Positions 16,001 through 46,000 of a stretch of 64,000 nt of DNA are shown here, one piece after another. Every line of letters begins with the position of its first letter. The first letter of the stretch is position 1. The position numbers and the translations under genes were made by a program. Origin of the DNA: Botryllus schlosseri (lineage: Eukaryota); contig CM119381.1 in the NCBI GenBank assembly GCA_051294905.1, forward strand, positions 19,034,001-19,098,000. The letters are read 5' to 3'. The notes beneath the pieces were generated by a model. It was not told where the DNA came from. It did not search any database and worked only from the letters and a program-made list of their open reading frames with translations.

Positions 16001-19000
16001 AGGGGATTTCTACTTGGCTGCATGAGCGGTGTGGAAAAGACATATTTGGCATCAACACTGCAGGTAACAGCCCGAAGCGGCCAACATATCATATTCAAGT
16101 CAAGAATGCACTGATCCACCCTCTTATCCTGGTACCTAGCGGAATGAAGAACCAAGATATAAACGGAAATTGAATCCTGGCAGAATCTAGCTAATTGACT
16201 TGTCTTGTTCCAAGAAAATTCAAGAATTAAGAAAATCCTAGGATCTAGTGAACAACCCTTGTTTTTAGCTTCTACATTGAAAATATCAAAGCTCATGAAA
16301 CAACAGTGACAAACTCACAAAATAATGATTTTCTCATTTTGCAAAGCAGTTATGACTAAAAGCCCAATGACCAAGTTGACTGATCATTGATCCCTGAAAT
16401 GTGAACGATGGTCTATGCAAGCATACGCAATACAATTATATGTGCAATGCACGGGCTCAGTGTTGTGTACTGATGCTAGTATTCATTGATTTTAACCAAT
16501 AACATCAGAAATGGCGATTTGATCCTCGTTGGAAAATTAGAATTGGCTGTGATTCGAACTGAACGTCAGTAAAACAAATAACTCACTATACACATGAGAC
16601 TTGTGTCGTAGTCTGATTCATATCTAGGTCAATGAGGTGTTGATCTCTAACAGTTGAATCATGCCTGCTAGTTGCAATGTCTTTCATGAAATTTAAGTTT
16701 TGGACTCCTGTTTCAGGTAGCAGAGCTTACGTGCTGCTGTCTCTCATACAAGACAAGCACGGCCAGATGTCCATCGGAGATGGGGCCGACTTTGAAAACC
16801 GAAACACTGTGATGGAGATGTTCGCCGATACTTCCTCTGGCGAGGAGACGCATACGGTCTCGTTAGATTTCGTGCAACTGCCGCAAGTGAGATATCGCAA
16901 TTTTCGATTTCCATGGTATACATCGACGCTTCATGCTTGCTGTTTTATACCGTGCACGCATTTCAATCAATAGTCAATAGTCATATGTATCTCAATACCG
17001 CATAGAATCGAAAGTGATGGGTATTTGTGATAGATATTGTCAATCTGAGAATATTTTGTCATGGTGTGTCAATATTTCTGTTGCTAGGTCTCCGGAAAAT
17101 GCCTTTTTAAATTGATGAGATGCTATCTGAAAGTCACCTCTCTCCTCGATATGGACACACAGTTTGGTCAGCTACTGAACGGCGATTGCGGAAATGGTAA
17201 AAAGAAAGGTAAGTCGCATTGATTCAACTTCTTGTGTCTTATATTTCAGCTCCTAGCGAGATTCCTTTTAGACCGACAGCGTGAAATTGAATAAATTTGA
17301 ACCTGCGCAATCGGCTGCGAACAAACGTAATCGATTAGCGCTTATTTTAAAACGTCATAAGATGTTAAGGCCGAGTTATCAAAAGATACGACATGCCTGA
17401 ATCGGTCCGTGGACATATGAGCATGCGACACTTTAGCATGCGACAATTTGGCATGCGACATATGAGCATGTGGGTTAAATTACGGGTTAGGGTTGGATTT
17501 ATGGTTGGGTTAGGGTTAGGCTTTAGGTTAGGATATATATAAGGGTTAATTTCAGGGCTATGTTTCGGGTTAGGGTAAGTTTTTTGACTATAAAGTCACA
17601 TCCTGAAGTGACGCATGCTGAAGTGTCCCATGCTGAACTGTCGCTTTCCATAGTGTCGCATGCTCATATGTCGGGCAACCCGTTGGATCTATACTGGAAT
17701 TAGGTATAGGTTAGGGTAAGTTTTTTGGTTACACAGTCACACGCTGAAGTGACGCATGCTGATGTGTTCCATGCTGAACTGTCGTTTTCCATTGTGTTGC
17801 ATGCTCATATGTCGGGCAACCGCCTGAATCACCTGAACTTGGTGCCATCACAGAACAGATTCCACAGTAGACTTCAATCGTATTTATTCGTGAAATGTTT
17901 TGTCGTCGCCGAGGTTGCGTATTCAATTGTTCGTGCTTGTGTTGGTGAATAGTGAATAGTTGATATTGAAGCAAGATTGAGGAACGCTAAATAATCGCTG
18001 GCAAGCTTACGCCGGCTTATACGTGTAAATTCGTCAGCACGATGAAGCTTGTCCTATCCGTGTAGTATGAGCATTTACGCATGTACTTAACCATAATAAA
18101 TTGATGCTAACTCTATAATTTTAAAACAATTTCAAACCCCTCTTTTTATTCAAACCCCTCCCTTTTTTTCATCTGGCCAGCCCATGTAAAAGTAAAAGTC
18201 GGCTCCTCTGACAGGAATAGTTATTCATCACATTGTGTGAAAGAATAATAGAAGTGGAACATGAATTCGCGCGTTTGGTCGAGAGAGGAGATGGTGTTTC
18301 TCAGCGAAATCCCAGTCCAAATCGACGCCGTAAACGAGGACGCTTCGAATGTATGATTACTAATCACGGATTACAATTTACTGGGACGTTTTAAGCACTA
18401 GTTGATCGTCGCCCACGAAGCTGTGTATTCAATTATTCTCGCGCGCATCGGTCAATTGTAAATAGTTGGCATTTACGCGATGATGATCTCAGACAATATA
18501 AATATACAAAAATTTGAAATAGCAGACAGCGGGCATTTAAGCATCTTGTATGAGGTGGCTGCCACCCCATAAATGTGTCATGGGGTGACGCAGCCATCCC
18601 GTAAATCTAGCGCCTGTGATTCCTGTGCTTTGCGGAAATAGTTTCACATTTGTCGAATTTCACCACGTCAGTTTTAAACAGAAGAATGTGCCGGGATGAA
18701 TTTTAATGGATAGCTCATGTAATACAAAGCCTCAGTATCCTAATGTTAGTGATAAACTAACCATAACCACGTATCATTGGTTATATAGTTGAAGAGCTTC
18801 AATAGAGGAACTTCAATATACAATTGAATAGTATATTCATATTGAAATGAACCTGAATATTTTCTGTCTGCGGTAGTGATGGGATCTCCCATGGGACCTA
18901 CTTTGGCTAACATCTTCGTAGGATATTATGAAGGCCAGCTTCTCTCCCAACGATATGTAGATAATATTTCTGTCATGTTCAGAAACGAGTTGAAGTGTGA

Positions 19001-22000
19001 TCAATTTCTCATTCGCTTAAACTCGCTTCACACGGCCTTGTGATTCATAATTGACAAAGAACGTAACTCATTATCATTTTTGGACGCTGCTTTAGTCGGG
19101 AAGCACATTTACCAACAAATTTGAAACGTCTGTCTTCAGGAAATCGACATTCACAGGCCAATACCTTCCTTGGAATTCATTTAGTCCTCAGCGCAGAAAA
19201 ATCAACCTCATAGGCACCCTCGTGTATAGAGCGTTGATGATATGTTCGGGTAACAAACGAGTTTAGAACTTGACAACATCCGCAAAATCTTACTTGACAA
19301 CGGTTACCCTGAACACGTCATCAACTGCGACATAGAGAGGAAATTAACGCAGTTCAACGCAGAAAAGTCAACAGAGCCCACCGAACGGACAACCAAAGAT
19401 GTTTATATTCATCTGCCTTGGATTGGTCCTATTTCCACCCGTTGAAAAACAATTGATATCTGCGGTCAGTAAGTGTTACGACACAGTCAAAACCAATGTG
19501 ATTTTTACGACTACACAACTGCTCCCTTCAACACGCAAAGACGTGCTTCCTGCACTTCAACAAAGTAATGTAGTGCCCGAATATAAGTGCCACTGTGATT
19601 GTGGCTACAGGAACGCATAAACCAGCATTGTCCCCAGATTTATCACAACACGTGCATCACGCTCGGTGAAAAGCTCACCCTTAACTCATCCGCTCAAGCT
19701 TGATGCTGAGCGATCAAAGGCCATAAATTCTGCCAGCGGCAAACATCTGTTGGATAATCCGATTTGTCCGAATAATTATCGAGACGACAAATTTCACGTC
19801 GTCGGAGGGACCGTTCACACTTCCATTTGTGTGCCTTGGAGTCGACTTTTATCAAAATACACCAACCAAAACTCTGTCAACAAAAGGAGTTCGTTTACCA
19901 CCTAAAAATAGTACATTGAGCGCTATCTCAATCGAAATTTCATGATGTTGACGTCGTATTTTGTGATACGATTGTTGATATACAATGTTCTTTCCCATTC
20001 TCTACTAGTTGCTGACGATTACCCCTGACGAGTGTCAGCCGAAAATATTCGGGTTCATTTCAATATGAATATACTATTCAATTGTATATTGAAGTTCTGT
20101 ACCTGCAAGAAGCTCTTCAAAACATATAGTAGGAAATATGACAATCATTAGCAATGAAAAGTAGGTATAGTATTAAGCGACAAAAGAATTCATAAAATGA
20201 AGGGTTTTCATCGATTAAAACTCGGGGTGTCGGCTGGCAAAAATGGTTCAAAATAGGCGTACTCGACTCGGATACTCGAGTTGCAGACACGAGTGTCAGC
20301 CGAAAATATTCGGGTTCATTTCAATATGAATATACTATTTGCTGATAATATAGTATTTCATTTATGCACAAGGGAAGAATTTCTGCCAAGTTTAGGCCCG
20401 CCTTATCTTGACATATTTTGATATACACCGTCCCGTTCCTGATATCCTACTGCTATAGAACTGATTCTGCTCAAGATCTCGCTATGTACTAAATCTTAGT
20501 TTATCATTGATACGTTTGGGTCTATCCAATTCCTTTTTGTTCTCATCCACATCTTCTCATTCTGTGATTTCGTTTGCAGAAACTCCCAGCGCGAAAGCCA
20601 ACGTCGGTTTGTTCGGCGAGCGGAAGTTTGAAGTGGTCATGGCGATCGGCGACCTTATTTACGAACTGTGCGAGGTGATGGGGTGGAATAACCTGGCGGT
20701 TGGCACGGAAGAGACACCGCAGCGTGCGACCGACAAAACCACGGACACGCCCGGTATGTTTTCTGTTTGGCGGCGTACTCAGTCAACACTTTGTTAGTCG
20801 CCCGTTTTTCGTTATAGCCGCAGAGTCAAAAAAGAGCGATGTCGTCATGCAATACGGTCGGGATTTACTGTCGTTTGTCGAGAAATTTGTAAAAGTCTCC
20901 GATCAAAAGCAGCCTGGTTAGTGTCGATATTCCAAAGTCCCACCCGTGATGTCATTGCCAAAAGGATTGTCTGGTTTTGTGTTTTCATGATGATGTATAT
21001 CAGTATTGCCTTTTCACGGACGACCTGACACTAGTTCGTGTACCTCGGTTTCAGAAGCCCCGCTGTAGGCCAAGGCGCATGTCTGAGTAAAAGACTAATT
21101 CACGTCGTTAGACACCTTCCTATCTTTTCATGGTGTTTTCAAATCATAAAACTAAAAAATTAGCAAACTAACCACAACCAGAATCGGAAGTTAATCGCGA
21201 ACGGGATGCCTTCAATTCCCCGTCTTTCTCCTTGCGTCAGGGACGCCCGGGCATTCTTCGCTTCACGACAAGCTGGGTCTGAGGCACGGCGCGCTGCCGT
21301 TGGATCGTAGGATTTTGAAAAAAGTGATGGACGCGGAGCCGCTAGTGAAACAGCCCGAGGGACATCCTATGGATGTCGACTCGGCGCCGTCTACCTCTCA
21401 GGCGCATGCTCACCCGAAACTAGCTGCGTTGCTGAAAACTCACGAGGTGAGAAGGCGTAGACTGGTCCCTTACATGTTTTGACTTACTTAAGTACTTCTA
21501 CTTTTCTGTAGTACTCAAGTACATTTGTTATCTACTGGTTTCACTTACTCAATTAGTTTTGTTTCAATACTAGTTTTACTTCAACAGCTTTCGGCGTACA
21601 AATTTTTGCATGCTTTATATTGCCAAGTGGAAAGTGGTTTGGTGATTCATAAACAAGTTCGGCGATTTGAACCTTTTCTTGACCATCGAGTACGATTTGA
21701 GCTTTACAAGAGACCAAACGGTTAAAATTACTTGTCGTTCCAACATTTTTGCCCTCCTATTGCCCTCTTCATACGCTGGCAATCCGTGGATACGACCGCA
21801 TAACTTATGCATTTTTTTATCATTTTGTTATTTGGGACCGTCGATTGACTCTGTGCGACATCGCCCTACCGTTTTATACCATTTGGCAACCGATTGTGCC
21901 GCCGAGTTTAATGTAATGAAATCTTGCTTGTTTGATCGGTAAATATTTCCCTATTGAACTCGTAGCACACAGTTTTTATTGTAGCTTATATATATATCTC

Positions 22001-25000
22001 GTCCACAAATGCTCCATGTTACTTGGCATCTTGGATTGTCTTTGGAGTAAAACTGTACCGGGCGTTGCATGTGCGACTCAATTTCATTTTCCTTTGACCT
22101 AGCCTATGGAGACTTCGGACGTACCTGCACCGTCGAATTCACTTCTCGAACCGAGGAAATCGAACTGTATTTTTGCTTCTAAGACGAAGGAAGGGCTCGA
22201 TCAAAACCTGCTTTCGGAACTCATCAAAAACGACCCCGCGTTACACAGATACAGGTGACTTTTATGGGCGAAAATTCTTACGTTATATTTCTCGATTTTT
22301 TCAAAAATTTCTTGTGAGCGGATTAAATTTGGACAGTAACGTATGTTTTCAACGGGTATTTTGGGACAGATTTTTGTGTTCATTAATAACTAGGTAGGCC
22401 GGTGTGGTTTTGTTATGAACTTTCAAAAGAAGCTGTACAGATTACGTAATCTCGATGGCACCTTGAACCTCGCAGTTGTGATTCACTGTGATACCTTGTC
22501 ACATAATCGTGACGACGTGATCTCGTGAACATACAAGTCGCGACAGCACATAATTTGTATTCATTCGTGCTTTCACTTCCCTGCCGTAGCGCTATACCCA
22601 GTTGAGCACCATGTTTCCTTGCGATTGTTGGAATGCCTATTGATATCTCGGAAATACGATATTGTTTTGATATTCGAGTTTCAAAACCTTTGTTATACGA
22701 CGGGGCGGAACTATCCGTAATGAATACGCGGAACCTCAGATTTATATTCTCCGACACGGTGAACTCAAGTAATTTAAATGTTATTGTTTGTTTTTAGCGA
22801 ACCCTTCAAAGAACGGTCCGCGTTTGACTCGGAGAAAGAATATGAAGAGTATGTACGTGCCATGTTGCGTCCTGGGTGGTTTGTGAAAGCCATCGACGGT
22901 CATAAAAAGGTGGAGAAAGGCGACACGGGGATATTTGAATCTTTTGCGGTGTCGCCAACAGGAGAATGCGCCGTTGTGAGTTCATTCACGTATCAAAACA
23001 TTGTTCTGTCGGCTTACTAATCAATGAAGCTGTAACAGTGGGATGAGTTTACGCCAGAGGGGGCCAGTAATGAATAACCTCTATTTTTTCAAAGTCTTAG
23101 TGTGGCAGAAAGTGGTTTCGGGATAGATTTGCACAACTTTTACGAGTGCAATTGACACAACGACCGGGCAAAATATTCCTATATCACAATAATTGAACAT
23201 AATTTTGAAAATACCACCTTTTTGTGGTGACGTAATCATTTTGCTTCGGCCGCTACAAACACCATGCAATATCGAATGTAGCCACTTCAGATCATCTACT
23301 AGAAGTATCGCGAACCCTCGGCCAAATCAGCTTCTTGAAACTAGTTACTTGATGTTCCTTTTCGGCTTCCACGTGAAGAAGTTTTGACGCGTGTTTAAAA
23401 TCGGTATTTATACTTGTAATTGTGTAAAAACGTATGTCTATTTTGATCCGTAGCCGGCACAAGAATTTCTTGCTACAAAGCTTGCTCTTACATCCGAATT
23501 ACATTCTTGAGGAGATTAGATTGCACAAAATTTCCGTTTGTCATCCACTTGTCACAGGAGAATGTCCTTTTCAGGTTAATTGGAACCGCCTCGGTCAACG
23601 CTATCCAGTACGGGAAGGCGGACTACAAATACTCGGTAGAACCAGGCCGGCCTCGGGGAACATGTCGACCAAGGACGCCGCGAAACATCTTCCAGATTTT
23701 TTGAAAACCCCGGAAAACGCCAAGCTCTGGCCTGTTTTAACGGGTAAGGTCTTTACACTGCTTTGTGCATCTGACACTTTTGTGCGTTCTAGACTTCTTT
23801 GAGAGGAAATTTTCAACTTTACGCAAAGGTTATGGTGGATCTCCATGTGATGACCTCTAGTGTAGCCATGGATCTGTACTGAGACCTAATATGGAGATCC
23901 AAGACAAAAGTCCAATGACAGTCACTTTCAGCCATTTATTACTCATGGCCCGCTACCTTGGTGTCTTCCCTGTGACTTTAAATGAAGACCTACTAGCAAA
24001 ATTTTGAATGATGAGCACTAAAAAGGGTCATCACTTTAGCCTGGTCGAACTTGTGTCATAGTCTTTTCAGCAGTTAGGGTGTAAATTTTTTAAAGATATT
24101 GCTGCCCTTACAATTCTCTAAAATAGAACGGTATGGCGCCCATCTAAAACAATGTCCCGGCCCATAAGTTGAAAATCCTTATGTCAATATTGGAAATAAG
24201 AACCTTCCGCTTGGCTAATAATTCGACTTATTGCAAGGAACTTTTGCAAGCAGTTTAGTGTTTGTTTAGTAATACGTTACTGCCACGCGAAGAGGTGCTT
24301 TGGCCCCAGTGGCATGCCAAGACCGATGATATGTAGTCGTTGTTATTGTAACTATTTGTTCCACTCGGCTTCTCACTTTGATTTTCAGGTCAAGACTTTT
24401 ACAAGCTGTCCGCTCGCCCGTACTCATCCGGCATGGAGTCTAATTTTGGGGAGTTTTTGAAACCAGAGAGACAGGATAATGGAGAAGTGCTTTCTCAGCG
24501 GCTGTGGTGGGAGGTGCTGTTTTTTATACACAAACTGAGTTCGGAAGTCCGGAAACAAGCTTACCAAAAGATTGCTGATGTCACCCAGGTAAAAATTAAT
24601 TCTATGATGGCAACCCAGCTTTTATTTTTATTAATTTTTCAAATCTTGTTCTAATTGAAATCCAATAATTTTTTCCTATTGTGTTTCCTACTTAATTCCA
24701 TATCTAAATTCAATGTAGAAAATGTAAACCCTAATCCCTGCTTATCTCTGCTGTCCTGGGGCTAGTATGGAGCATAACGGTCTGCGAAGTATCCGGCCTT
24801 CGAGTACGATTATGGTCATCACGTCAGCCCGTGATTCAATTATTTAATTCTAGCAATATGCCTACTATCTGGGGCGTTTTATGACATGTCTTGTGGCAAG
24901 CTGTTTGACATTGGTTGTTTTTATAGAATGGAGTGGGAGACGCGGTCCAATCGCTGTCTTGTTTTAAAGACCACTCGATGAGTTTGTCTCAAATCACGGA

Positions 25001-43000: not shown

Positions 43001-46000
43001 AGTAATTTTGGGCTTTTTTAGGGGTATAAATATCGTCTGACAGAGAGCCAATCTGACAAAAGTAATGTGATATTCGTAATCAGCACCCTCAAAAACCCCA
43101 GAAACGGCTCTCATATTTTCTGCCTAAAAAAAAAAATTTCATTTTGTTGAACAGTGTTATCAGTGCTAACCACAGTTCACAATGGGCATACGGTTGACGT
43201 GAACACTAATAATTGCATTTCGTTGCTAAAATTGTCCTCTTTTGTTATCTATTTAGCAGTCAGCTTCCCAAATTTCACTTGCCTCGTTTATGGGCTCCAC
43301 GAATCCATCCAAAAAAAGTGTTTGTGCCAAAAAACGGTCAAGAACCTCAGAAATAGAGAAAGGCTGATATTTTCAGTTCTGTCTTAAGAATTCAAAACTG
43401 TGTCTTATCTTCATTTATTCAACCGACAAGACAGCATAGTGGTAGAGTGCCCAGCCCCACCATAGGTAGTTGTGAGTTCCAGCCGCAGATGACAGACTAG
43501 ACTTGCTTGTGAAACTGGTATATATGGCATCGCTGCTTGTCCCTCCAGGATACCATGATAAACATATATAGAAATGAATAGGGGTGATAACTAAGCTGAA
43601 AACGCTAAAGGCTTGGAGTGCTCTCCTGACGGCCTGCCTTTTTTCTTTTCTGTAGCGGCCAGTCTTTACCCGTATCCGGATTTGATCTCGTGGCATTTGG
43701 CTCACGGCATGACGTCCAATCCTGCAGCGATAACCATAGGAAAAGATTGCCAAGCGCTCACCAATGACCAGGTAAGAATTTTGATGCGCACACATTGAAT
43801 TTCGTGTTGTATTGCCGTTGCAATGTATTGTCTTGCGGAACATGTGCTCGGCCTGTAACGTTAAGAAAAGGCGGCGTCCTTAAGCCGTTCTTTATTCCTG
43901 CAGATTTTTCAAGAGATCAGGAACACCATTGCAAGGTGTGCCCAAACGCTAGACTGCGATAGGGCCATCGTCGAAGCCTTGCTGTTGGAAATGGATTGGC
44001 GAACAGACGAAGTGATCGAGGTGTGTTCTTGAGGCGTAGAAGTATTACCTAATCTGGTCTAGATATTAAGGAGGGAGTCCATATATAAAGCTGGATGTAT
44101 TAAAGAGTAAATTATCGCATTCATCAGGATTTAGCACACCTGGATTATGGAAACCGATTAACAGTTTTTAATCGAAGCATTAGTATTCTGCCAGATCAAG
44201 TAACCTCATGATTTCCGCCCTCAGTGTCATCGGACTGATCAGGAAGTCTGTCGTAATTGAATTGAATAATTATACTTGGTTAATGATTATGTTCAAGAAC
44301 AAAGTTCTCTCGGCAAGCCTAAACGAACAGATTTTACCACTCAATATTGATGACTTGCCTAGAGCTCATCTCGCATTGAAAATTACTGTAAAAAGTACTG
44401 TAAAAATGGCAGCACTAATTTACTTTCATGGCCGGTGATTCTGAAACTTTATGAACAACAGTCGGCTACTTGCATGCGTTTTCAACTCGGCGGTCGCTTA
44501 ATTTTCAGCGTTACGCGACCAACAAAGATCAAACGCTGTCCGCGATTGGATGCCAGGAGAAGCACCCGTCTAATGTAGACGCCCAAAGCTGTGAAGATGA
44601 CAATTCCTGTCCTATTTGCACTCATGAAATGATGCCGGGAGAAGGTTTTGCGCTGCATTGCGGCCACGCCTGCTGCCAGGTTAGGCGTGTTTGCGGTTCA
44701 AGACCCTAATCGCTTTATATCAACAATTGTGTTGCAAAGATTTGAAGATATTTCGCCGGCTAACGCGATTTCTCCCTTGCAGGACTGTTGGAAAATGTAT
44801 CTGTCGCAAAAGCTGGAGGAAAACCGCGCTTTCAACACGAAATGTCCGATCGCAAACTGCAACGCGCGTCCGACACTCGGCACGTACGAGACAATTTTCA
44901 CGTATGACGGAGAGAAGCTGGAGAAGTACGTATGCGAATTTTATTACAAAGCGGCCGCGGCAACGCAGTAAACATGAGGTACACAAAGGCACAGTATGGC
45001 AATCCAATGAGCTTTTGTGAAAATATTTCTTCATCACGGTTGAATAACCATCCAAAGTTCCATACGACCAAGAATCGATAAAATATCAGGGTTAGAAGCC
45101 CAAAAAGACCAAACTCAATCGCGCCGAAACTGCTAGGGTAAAAGATCAACTATTCTTGTGATTAGTATTTCTCTTCTGAACCGCCGCCGATGTAAAACCA
45201 CACGATCATCGACAGGTACAAAGACGCTCTGGTTCGTTCCTACGTCGAAAACACGAGGTCTCTGTCTTACTGTCACTGTCCCTCTGGGTGCGACAGAATC
45301 CTGCGCAAGGGCACGGCGCATCAAAACGTCGGCACCTGCCAGAGATGCGGATGGCAGACCTGCTTCGCCTGCACTTACATCGAGGTACGGCTCGTTCGGC
45401 ATTGTGATTTTAGCATATCTATCAAATGGTATCTTGTCGATTTGCAGGCGCATTACCCTGCCAGCTGCGCGCACATGTCCCAGTGGCTCGAAGACGGAGG
45501 CTACCACGAGGACATGGGCGAGGATGCACGCAGCAAACTTCTGGCAAGGCTCATCTCGAAACGTTGCCCAAAGTGTCAGGCTAATATCGAGAAGGATGAC
45601 GGTTGCCTGCAGTAAGTGACCTTATATATTGACGGCTATCTGACAATCACCAAGCACTTTAGAGTCGAAATACAAACAGTGTCTACTGAGTAAATACCAG
45701 ACCACAATCTGAGTTTTCATACCGTCACATGCCACCACATTTTCATGACTTGCCCTTTTTATGTTATCTTGCATCACTTTTCATTCTGAACAGCTTCTTG
45801 GAGGAACAGAACTTCAATATACAATTGAATTGTATATTCATATTGAAATGAACCCGAATATTTTCGGCTGACACTCGTCAGGGGTAATCGTCAGCAACTA
45901 GTAGAGAATTCAAAAGAACAGCGTATATCAGTGGTTCTTAACCTTGCCTCCAGCGCCCCCCAAGGGGCGCTGGCGAGTTTGAAGGGGGCGGAAACGCTCA

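What the first reader, a model, noticed from the sequence alone, without database searches (positions are those of the whole stretch)
20021..20315. Truncated second hammerhead half could be the in-cis substrate of the intact ribozyme
Seen: 261 nt downstream in the same intron and orientation lies a copy lacking CUGA but keeping GAA-AATATT-C-GGGT (20302-20315). Known: minimal Penelope hammerheads cleave as dimers through the palindromic helix III, with one monomer's core cutting the other's C17. Inference: core 20021-20049 could pair with 20305-20315 within one pre-mRNA and cleave after C20311. This would be a one-way, intramolecular split ribozyme assembled by chance inside a host intron, possibly affecting CUL9 splicing or output.
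Basis: partly seen in the sequence, partly recalled or inferred. Interest (0 to 1): 0.7.

Follow-up and report, generated by a model that had tools for sequence, protein, structure and literature searches.

The report
Penelope retrotransposon debris, not a split ribozyme

Summary
20028-20078 and 20289-20339 are an exact direct repeat 261 nt apart. Copy 1 (20021-20054) has a complete minimal type I hammerhead core. Copy 2 lacks the 5' strand of helix I and C3-G5.

Both are 3' ends of one Penelope-like element (PLE) family. Its 30-nt core occurs 3,662 times in this genome, and earlier follow-ups of this scan reported the same family on other windows. Copy 2 is a 52-nt, 5'-truncated, tail-less PLE end. 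It is separated from a 1.25-kb PLE copy by a 174-nt piece of unrelated sequence that looks captured. The arrangement is therefore an accident of retrotransposition.

The proposed register (20044-49 with 20305-10; 20021-24 with 20312-15; C17 = 20311) is correct on paper. It is a one-sided version of the known double hammerhead.

Three points weigh against function:
- The motif's predicted lowest-energy fold is two inactive hairpins.
- The same intron carries an antisense PLE arm (18808-18864) that is 98% complementary over 57 nt to copy 1 and 97% over 38 nt to copy 2. This far outweighs the 10-bp split pairing.
- RNA reads give zero depth on the unique intron parts and no pile-up of ends at the cleavage site, even for the whole family.

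Verdict: an ordinary finding of low interest.

The parts
16888..20577 (+). Intron of the CUL9-like host gene that holds everything below
   Evidence: Donor CAAG|GTGAGA at 16887/16888. Acceptor tttgcag|AAAC at 20577/20578, where a 1,520-nt transcript contig begins to match (table 8). The reading frame continues across the join. Cul7/CPH domain at 22778-23017 and IBR at 45196-45612, both on the + strand.
18790..18864 (-). Inverted PLE 3'-end fragment (tail plus the 3' half of the hammerhead, with G1.1 mutated to A). In the pre-mRNA it is an antisense arm against both hammerhead copies.
   Evidence: BLAST to family copies. Inverted repeats I1 (57 nt, 98%) and I2 (38 nt, 97%). Cofold gains of -73.6 and -45.2 kcal/mol.
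18865..18871 (+). 7-nt junction filler TGTCTGC between the head-to-head PLE pieces. Its complement GCAGACA is the same 7-mer that precedes copy 2 at 20283-20289.
   Evidence: Sequence; see Noticed in passing.
18872..20122 (+). 5'-truncated, decayed PLE copy: RT motifs from MGSP..YVDN onward, endonuclease remnant, hammerhead, and the long 'tail' end.
   Evidence: 83-100% identity per 60-nt bin to other copies, which share a 3' end near 20122. Weak RVT_1 hit. A full-length relative, L039, has an 859-aa ORF with RVT_1 at 36 bits.
20011..20016 (+). Upstream box GCUGAC, complementary to GUCAGC (20034-39) in loop II. Candidate pseudoknot that stands in for a proper helix II.
   Evidence: Direct reading of the sequence. 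Lead from earlier notes. The only hairpin alternative is 2 bp with a bulge. Covariation cannot be tested in this young family.
20021..20054 (+). Copy 1: complete minimal type I hammerhead motif, predicted cleavage after C20050.
   Evidence: Sequence. The exact 30-mer occurs 3,662 times in the genome. It matches the min-HHR features described in PMC4209133. No Rfam hit.
20118..20291 (+). 174-nt non-PLE block between the two PLE ends, apparently a captured fragment.
   Evidence: One 96-97% copy 174 kb away (L002). There it is part of an older repeat that continues 85 nt past the block's edge and is shared with L033. Junction overlaps are CAAAA and ACG.
20289..20340 (+). Copy 2: 52-nt PLE end, 5'-truncated inside the hammerhead core and ending at the tail-less 3' end class. 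It keeps GAA-AAUAUU-C(20311)-GGGU.
   Evidence: Tail-less ends at equivalent positions 20080-20090 in many head-to-head partners. The optional 30-40 bp tail of PLEs is described in PMC11167929.
20348..20354 (+). ATATAGT, also present at 18783-18789 and 20123-20129. It is a candidate target-site duplication, but which pair is the real one is ambiguous.
   Evidence: Sequence. For comparison, the L035 pair has a clean 10-nt duplication.

Best explanation
The region 18790 to about 20347 is debris of Penelope-like element (PLE) retrotransposition in an intron of a CUL9-like gene. It consists of a 75-nt inverted PLE end, a 1.25-kb 5'-truncated sense copy that carries the family's minimal hammerhead near its 3' end, a 174-nt captured piece of unrelated sequence, and a 52-nt tail-less PLE end truncated inside the hammerhead core. 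This most likely arose from one composite insertion with template switches, or otherwise from successive insertions. The 'half hammerhead' is therefore just an extreme 5' truncation. Its ability to pair with copy 1 as a one-sided double hammerhead follows automatically from the palindromic helix III of every copy in this family. In the real pre-mRNA the upstream antisense arm should zip up with copy 1 over 57 nt or more, covering G12-A14, helix III, C17 and the 3' strand of helix I. What is left unpaired favours two inactive local hairpins. The expected outcome is no meaningful cleavage at C20311 and no effect on the host gene. What is shown: the identity of the pieces, the family, the host intron, the pairings, and the lack of RNA evidence. 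What is inferred: the order of insertion events and the absence of catalysis.
For: Family and anatomy:
- The query's first 133 nt recur at 95-99% identity with variable 5' truncation and frequent head-to-head partners.
- The core 30-mer occurs 3,662 times.
- A full-length copy has an 859-aa ORF with RVT_1 and a weak GIY-YIG hit, and hammerheads 2,692 nt apart.
- There are two 3'-end classes about 35-43 nt apart, matching the optional PLE 'tail'. Extension of both target strands explains the inverted pairs (PMC11167929).

Captured block.

Folding:
- The lowest-energy fold of 20017-20058 is two hairpins, CUGAC/GUCAG and CCGAA/UUCGG, at -10.5 kcal/mol.
- The enforced cis-split fold lies +24.5 kcal/mol above the ensemble. 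That is 5.9 kcal/mol worse than the monomer hammerhead fold.
- The antisense arm is 98% complementary over 57 nt to copy 1 and 97% over 38 nt to copy 2, with cofold gains of -73.6 and -45.2 kcal/mol.

RNA:
- Depth is 0 on 20129-20283 and 20346-20562 in all four runs.
- Family reads are deep and flat across the site (X23: 180/160, 196/200 and 188/174 in consecutive bins), and table 6 lists no place where molecules begin or end.
- The window's private bases at 19996 and 20105 are rare in the reads.

Literature: PLE hammerheads have low activity even as dimers (PMC4209133, PMC6765202). No RNA-seq ends at the site were found in Anolis (PMC11167929).
Against: - The pairing register for a one-sided double hammerhead is perfect: a 6-bp helix III, a 4-bp helix I, C17 unpaired, and the A15.1-U16.1 pair kept.
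- In a two-piece calculation the split form costs +11.4 kcal/mol. The canonical full dimer costs +21.8 for two sites, or 10.9 per site. If the family's dimers work at all, the half dimer is no worse per site.
- Nearest-neighbour models ignore the core's tertiary contacts and the pseudoknot.
- The RNA runs are poly(A)-type or single-cell libraries sampled at 3-6%, and the host gene is barely covered. Absence of reads is therefore weak evidence.
- Helicases or co-transcriptional folding could keep the antisense arm from pairing.
Confidence: 0.85

Rival explanations
1. One reading: within the pre-mRNA, copy 1's core (with helices I and III supplied by copy 2) cleaves after C20311, 267 nt upstream of the 3' splice site, and this lowers or alters CUL9 splicing or output.
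For: Correct register and sense orientation in a single intron. Per-site cost is similar to the canonical dimer.
Against: - The antisense arm competes with 38-57 bp against 10 bp.
- Inactive hairpins are favoured.
- There is no RNA evidence at the locus or for the family.
- Low in vitro rates are reported for PLE hammerheads (PMC4209133, PMC6765202).
- From my own knowledge, not checked here: slow ribozymes placed in introns do not disturb splicing, because the exons stay tethered to polymerase II (Dye, Gromak and Proudfoot 2006), and only fast-cleaving ones abort processing (Fong et al. 2009).
Confidence: 0.03
2. Test-tube only: the short transcript 19995-20340, which lacks the antisense arm, shows slow cleavage after C20311 that may be independent of concentration. 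This would be a curiosity without a cellular role.
For: The register is correct. The 261-nt tether gives a high local concentration (my estimate is of order 0.1 mM for an unstructured chain). PLE hammerheads do cleave in vitro, and C3 or G8 mutations abolish it (PMC11167929). Dimer constructs cleave weakly (PMC4209133).
Against: The two-hairpin inactive fold dominates, and the enforced split fold sits at +11 to +24 kcal/mol in nearest-neighbour models. Helix III is six A-U pairs. Copy 1's own GGGU competes for ACCC at zero distance. At usual transcript concentrations, intermolecular dimers of copy 1 would dominate.
Confidence: 0.15
3. Trans cutting: abundant transcripts of other family copies supply intact cores that cut either C20050 or C20311 of this intron.
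For: Family RNA is abundant, at hundreds-fold depth against zero for the intron. All copies share the palindromic helix III and helix I.
Against: Family reads come from both strands, so antisense pairing would mask the sites. There is no end pile-up at the site. Reported activity is low (PMC4209133).
Confidence: 0.04
4. Retrozyme-like unit: the 261 nt between the two C17 positions form a small repeat unit that is excised and circularised.
For: The spacing falls within the 150-400 nt range of animal non-LTR retrozymes (PMC7229834, abstract).
Against: - There are only 1.2 'units'.
- The interior is a near-unique captured block, not a repeated monomer.
- The second hammerhead is incomplete, so C20050 has no partner core in cis.
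- Read depth over the block is zero.
Confidence: 0.01

Closest known systems
Minimal hammerheads of Penelope-like elements (Cervera and de la Pena 2014, PMC4209133; Lunse et al. 2017, known to me only through citations in PMC6765202)
   Same: Type I motif in the terminal repeat of a PLE, with a 4-bp helix I, a G10.1-C11.1 pair, a 1-bp helix III with a palindromic loop, thousands of copies, mostly on truncated elements, and pairs on opposite strands 100-700 bp apart.
   Different: There is no long hairpin helix II. Loop II instead complements a box upstream of helix I. The family is very homogeneous, so there are no covariations.
Double hammerhead of dimeric viroid and newt satellite RNAs (Forster et al. 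1988, cited in PMC4209133 and PMC6765202)
   Same: Helix III forms between two copies, and each core cuts the other copy's C17. With one core defective, only one site can be cut.
   Different: Here the second partner is a truncation product lacking C3-G5 and the 5' strand of helix I. The two are separated by unrelated sequence rather than by a repeat unit. No activity has been shown.
PAc (Poseidon of Anolis) in vitro retrotransposition (Frangieh et al. 2024, PMC11167929)
   Same: Two reverse-transcription start sites give an optional 30-40 bp tail. Both target strands are extended, which explains head-to-head pairs. The ORF starts beside the hammerhead. Hammerhead cleavage is not needed for insertion, and no RNA-seq ends are found at the site.
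   Different: Different host and family. Nothing was tested biochemically here.
Animal non-LTR retrozymes (PMC7229834; bioRxiv 10.64898/2026.07.22.740005)
   Same: Short spacing between same-strand hammerhead sequences derived from PLE terminal repeats.
   Different: This is not a tandem array of a repeated monomer, the second ribozyme is incomplete, and it lies in an intron. The preprint reports that retrozymes are depleted from introns.
Chimeric retrocopies made by template switching of a retroelement reverse transcriptase, such as U6/L1 chimeras (my own knowledge, not checked here)
   Same: A non-element sequence is sandwiched between element pieces, with short overlaps at the junctions.
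   Different: Here the element is a PLE. The captured piece is not a known small RNA (no Rfam hit). A single-event origin is inferred, not shown.

Membership tests
Hammerhead ribozyme, type I minimal form of PLEs | Conserved core C3-U4-G5-A6-N7-G8-A9 and G12-A13-A14, the A15.1-U16.1 pair, and H17 at the cleavage site | tested here: met
   Copy 1: CUGACGA 20025-31, GAA 20041-43, A20044-U20049, C20050. Copy 2 lacks C3-G5, so it is not a ribozyme by itself.
Hammerhead ribozyme, type I minimal form of PLEs | Helix I of 4-5 bp closing the motif, and a palindromic 15.2-16.2 / loop 3 | tested here: met
   ACCC 20021-24 pairs with GGGU 20051-54. AAUAUU 20044-49 is self-complementary. Features as listed in PMC4209133.
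Hammerhead ribozyme, type I minimal form of PLEs | Hairpin helix II (6-8 bp in published PLE motifs) with G10.1-C11.1 | tested here: not met
   G20032-C20040 can pair, but the enclosed UGUCAGC gives at most one more G-C pair, with a bulge. A 6-bp pairing GCUGAC(20011-16)/GUCAGC(20034-39) with the 5' flank is possible instead. It resembles the known pseudoknot between loop II and the 5' flank (my own knowledge).
Hammerhead ribozyme, type I minimal form of PLEs | Match to a curated hammerhead covariance model | tested here: not met
   No Rfam hammerhead hit at the gathering threshold on the whole window, nor at E up to 10 on 19800-20500. This is expected for motifs without hairpin helices II and III.
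Hammerhead ribozyme, type I minimal form of PLEs | Covariation supporting the helices | tested here: inconclusive
   All 158 loop variants found are point mutants of the one family, and the 30 fetched show no compensation in the box. The family is too young for covariation to be informative.
Hammerhead ribozyme, type I minimal form of PLEs | Self-cleavage at H17 | tested here: inconclusive
   No pile-up of read ends at 20050/20051 among hundreds of family reads per run (table 6). The libraries are not designed to capture such ends. There is no biochemical test.
Penelope-like element | Reverse transcriptase ORF | tested here: met
   L039 has an 859-aa ORF with RVT_1 at 36 bits, above the 29.6 cutoff. 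The window copy keeps the MGSP..YVDN motifs, with a weak RVT_1 hit at E 0.009.
Penelope-like element | C-terminal GIY-YIG endonuclease | tested here: inconclusive
   GIY-YIG at E 0.028 and 15.2 bits, below the 22.6 cutoff, at the expected C-terminal place in L039.
Penelope-like element | Hammerhead in the terminal repeat, tandem or inverted partial copies, 5' truncation, and an optional 30-40 bp tail | tested here: met
   Features as described in PMC4209133 and PMC11167929.
Double (dimeric) hammerhead | Two copies whose helix III strands pair with each other and whose helix I strands are exchanged | tested here: met
   20044-49 pairs with 20305-10 (6 A-U pairs) and 20021-24 with 20312-15 (4 bp), by direct reading. 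The structure could be enforced.
Double (dimeric) hammerhead | Two complete cores, and a dimer fold that can compete with alternative folds | tested here: not met
   Only one core is complete. The fold lies +11 to +24 kcal/mol above the alternatives, and the antisense arm gives -45 to -74 kcal/mol. The canonical dimer is equally disfavoured by this model, so the energy part is only indicative.
Non-LTR retrozyme | Tandem array of a 150-400 nt monomer, each with an intact hammerhead | tested here: not met
   The interior 20126-20288 is near-unique in the genome. No other copy of the 261-nt unit was found. The second motif is truncated.

The most novel reading that the evidence does not exclude
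The least ordinary reading still open: when the antisense arm is kept away (co-transcriptionally, or by helicases), copy 1 acts as a natural one-way hammerhead on a substrate 261 nt downstream in a host intron. This would show that truncated PLE ends scattered near intact ones can be cut in cis or in trans by family ribozymes.
Probability: 0.03. Interest if true: 0.5.

Novelty: new member of a known kind. Interest (0 to 1): 0.13.

Why it matters
If it were true, it would be a natural example of a split, unidirectional hammerhead acting on a host pre-mRNA. It would also suggest that the thousands of PLE ends in this genome can nick host introns. As it stands, it is one more instance of a known association (PLE terminal repeat plus minimal, dimer-type hammerhead), and its geometry is an automatic by-product of 5' truncation. 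The useful lesson for the scan is that in this genome any 'half hammerhead near an intact one' should first be read as PLE insertion debris and checked for inverted partners in the same transcript.

Tried and rejected
- **Rfam:** scans at gathering thresholds and at E up to 10 found no hammerhead. This says nothing for such minimal motifs.
- **Folding as a discriminating test:** it penalises the accepted double hammerhead as much per site as the split one. I use it only for the relative cost and for the antisense arm.
- **Covariation for helix II or the pseudoknot:** the relaxed core pattern finds only point mutants of the one family, with no compensation. This cannot be tested here.
- **Counting truncated halves genome-wide:** the 3' 36-mer occurs 2,797 times and the 46-mer with the core prefix 2,157 times. 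The 23% gap is about what 2-3% point divergence over 10 nt would give, so it does not measure truncation.
- **RNA reads:** no coverage of locus-specific sequence, so cleavage at 20311 could not be tested. Only one read-laying run was allowed.
- **Target-site duplication to fix the insertion's right edge:** ATATAGT occurs at three places, so the result is ambiguous.
- **Simple 'two independent insertions into native sequence':** rejected as the sole story. The middle block's edges coincide with both PLE junctions, and its relative L002 continues into an older repeat where the window has the PLE tail.
- **Lunse et al. 2017 (PMC5785218):** not held.
- **Retrozyme reading:** rejected.
Full report
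**Observation**

Copy 1 is ACCC-CUGACGA-G-U-GUCAGC-C-GAA-AAUAUU-C-GGGU at 20021-20054. In hammerhead numbering, C3 is 20025, G8 is 20030, G12-A14 are 20041-43, A15.1 is 20044, U16.1 is 20049 and C17 is 20050.

The repeat finder gives an exact 51-nt direct repeat, 20028-20078 = 20289-20339, with spacing 261. Copy 2 therefore begins at A6. It lacks the 5' strand of helix I and C3-G5, but keeps GAA, AAUAUU (20305-10), C (20311) and GGGU (20312-15). Rfam finds no hammerhead here at gathering thresholds or at E up to 10. That is expected for a motif without hairpin helices II and III.

**What the pieces are**

Searching the window's own genome with 19990-20345 gave 643 candidate matches. The best 40 match the first 133 nt at 95-99% identity. 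The exact 30-nt core occurs 1,846 + 1,816 times, against 0 for the reversed control.

BLAST of 17000-23000 against 29 fetched loci shows the following.
- Copies share a 3' end near 20122 and are 5'-truncated at all lengths.
- Most loci hold a head-to-head inverted partner, whose 3' end lies at equivalent positions 20081-20090.
- A locus with two same-strand hammerheads 2,692 nt apart (L039) holds an 859-aa ORF. It has RVT_1 above threshold and a weak GIY-YIG match at the C-terminus (E 0.028).

These are the marks of a Penelope-like element:
- a hammerhead in the terminal repeat (PMC4209133);
- an optional 30-40 bp 'tail' lying between two reverse-transcription start sites;
- extension of both target strands, which explains the inverted pairs;
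- an ORF that starts beside the hammerhead (PMC11167929).

Several earlier follow-ups of this scan reached the same family assignment on other windows of this genome. I re-derived it independently here.

**Anatomy in the window**

| Coordinates | Strand | Piece |
|---|---|---|
| 18790-18864 | - | 75-nt PLE end |
| 18865-18871 | + | 7-nt filler |
| 18872-20122 | + | decayed PLE copy, from the RT motif MGSP onward to the long tail, carrying copy 1 |
| 20118-20291 | + | non-PLE block |
| 20289-20340 | + | 52-nt PLE end (copy 2), stopping at the tail-less end class |

The middle block is almost unique in the genome. There is one copy at 96-97% identity 174 kb away on the same contig, and one weak relative. 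In that other locus (L002) the homology with the weak relative (L033) runs 85 nt beyond the block's edge, at 69% over 189 nt. At that same edge the window switches to the PLE tail. The window's block is therefore a fragment of a longer old repeat.

The block's two edges overlap the PLE pieces by CAAAA and ACG. I read this as capture by template switching during a composite PLE insertion. Successive insertions cannot be excluded, because ATATAGT occurs at 18783-89, 20123-29 and 20348-54.

**Host**

On the + strand there is a Cul7/CPH domain at 22778-23017 and an IBR domain at 45196-45612. The donor at 16887/16888 and the acceptor at 20577/20578 keep the reading frame. A transcript contig starts matching exactly at 20578 (table 8). 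All PLE pieces therefore lie in a single 3.7-kb intron of a CUL9-like gene, and copies 1 and 2 are in sense orientation. I could not check the exon numbers 6-7.

**Can the split ribozyme form?**

The register is right. It gives six A-U pairs for helix III, four pairs for helix I, and C20311 at position 17. This is a one-sided double hammerhead, the mechanism proposed for PLE motifs (PMC4209133, Fig. 1A text; PMC6765202).

Three things count against it.

1. The motif's lowest-energy fold is two adjacent hairpins, CUGAC/GUCAG and CCGAA/UUCGG, at -10.5 kcal/mol. This buries the core, G12 and C17. In the 356-nt transcript the enforced split fold lies 24.5 kcal/mol above the ensemble, and the monomer hammerhead fold lies 18.6 above it. 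In a two-piece calculation the split form costs +11.4, while the canonical full dimer costs +21.8, or 10.9 per site. The useful number is the roughly 6 kcal/mol penalty of the cis-split form relative to the monomer fold.

2. The same intron holds the inverted PLE end. Positions 18808-18864 are 98% complementary over 57 nt to 20041-20097, and 18827-18864 are 97% complementary over 38 nt to 20302-20339. The predicted gains are -73.6 and -45.2 kcal/mol. This arm is transcribed first. It covers G12-A14, helix III, C17 and the 3' strand of helix I of copy 1, or the whole substrate part of copy 2.

3. Helix II is not a hairpin. Loop II (GUCAGC) complements GCUGAC at 20011-16, so the catalytic half probably starts at 20011, not 20021. 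This lead came from earlier notes. I could verify only the complementarity, because the family's variants are uncompensated point mutants.

**RNA evidence**

I laid three raw RNA runs and one contig set on 19850-20750.
- Depth is zero on the unique block (20129-20283) and on the downstream intron (20346-20562) in all runs. The host exon is barely covered.
- The PLE part is deeply covered on both strands by reads that mostly run on into other flanks.
- The window's private bases at 19996 and 20105 are rare in these reads, so they come from other copies.
- Depth is flat across the cleavage site, and no place where molecules begin or end is listed.

This agrees with the report that no RNA-seq reads begin or end at the hammerhead site of an Anolis PLE (PMC11167929). 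The libraries are not suited to capturing such ends, so this is weak negative evidence.

**Verdict**

Any truncated end of this family can pair this way with any intact copy. The arrangement is insertion debris. In the real intron a far stronger antisense pairing competes, and nothing indicates cleavage or a host effect.

My estimates are about 15% for detectable cleavage in the short test-tube construct and about 3% for a cellular role.

The same PLE hammerhead family had already been found by this scan on other DNA of this genome.

Noticed in passing
window 20118-20291; L002 1501-1674; L033 1398-1582: A 174-nt non-PLE block is sandwiched between two PLE ends, with junction overlaps CAAAA and ACG. 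It has a 96-97% copy 174 kb away, where it is part of a longer old repeat. This is a candidate for capture by template switching of the PLE reverse transcriptase.
   Followed up: partly
window 18865-18871 and 20283-20289: The same 7-mer, GCAGACA, directly precedes both 5'-truncated hammerhead fragments in their own orientation: the minus-strand fragment and copy 2. It also extends the complementarity between the antisense arm and copy 2. This may be a chance match or a trace of the same acceptor template.
   Followed up: partly
L035, L036, L037 near position 1507; window 20289: At least four loci are 5'-truncated at the same point inside the hammerhead (A|CGAGUGUCAGCC). L037 carries a tandem duplication of the 12-mer CGAGTGTCAGCC at the junction. 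This may be a pause or switch hotspot at the CUGAC/GUCAG hairpin.
   Followed up: partly
L039 (G000:C1:13417700-13421800, minus strand): An apparently full-length PLE with an uninterrupted 859-aa ORF and hammerheads 2,692 nt apart. The ORF starts beside the upstream hammerhead and reads through the 'tail'. The family may still be active, with 3,662 exact core copies.
   Followed up: partly
L040 (G000:C1:7709700-7710600, minus strand): Two intact same-strand hammerheads only 212 nt apart, with an inverted PLE piece between them. This is a natural case where a complete double hammerhead could form in cis, and a better test object than the window's half copy.
   Followed up: no
window 19943-20128 (reads of runs X21-X23): Family transcripts are abundant on both strands and mostly run on into unrelated flanks (69-96% of the laid reads). 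This indicates read-through transcription of many dispersed copies and plenty of potential antisense RNA.
   Followed up: no
window 19980-20122 versus 19200-19979: The last 140 nt or so of the sense PLE copy are 96-100% identical to other copies, while the body averages about 90%. Either the 3' module is conserved between subfamilies or the copy is itself a template-switch chimera.
   Followed up: partly
window 18808-18864 with 20041-20097: A 57-bp near-perfect inverted repeat 1.2 kb apart within one intron would form a long double-stranded RNA stem in the pre-mRNA, a possible editing or silencing substrate.
   Followed up: no
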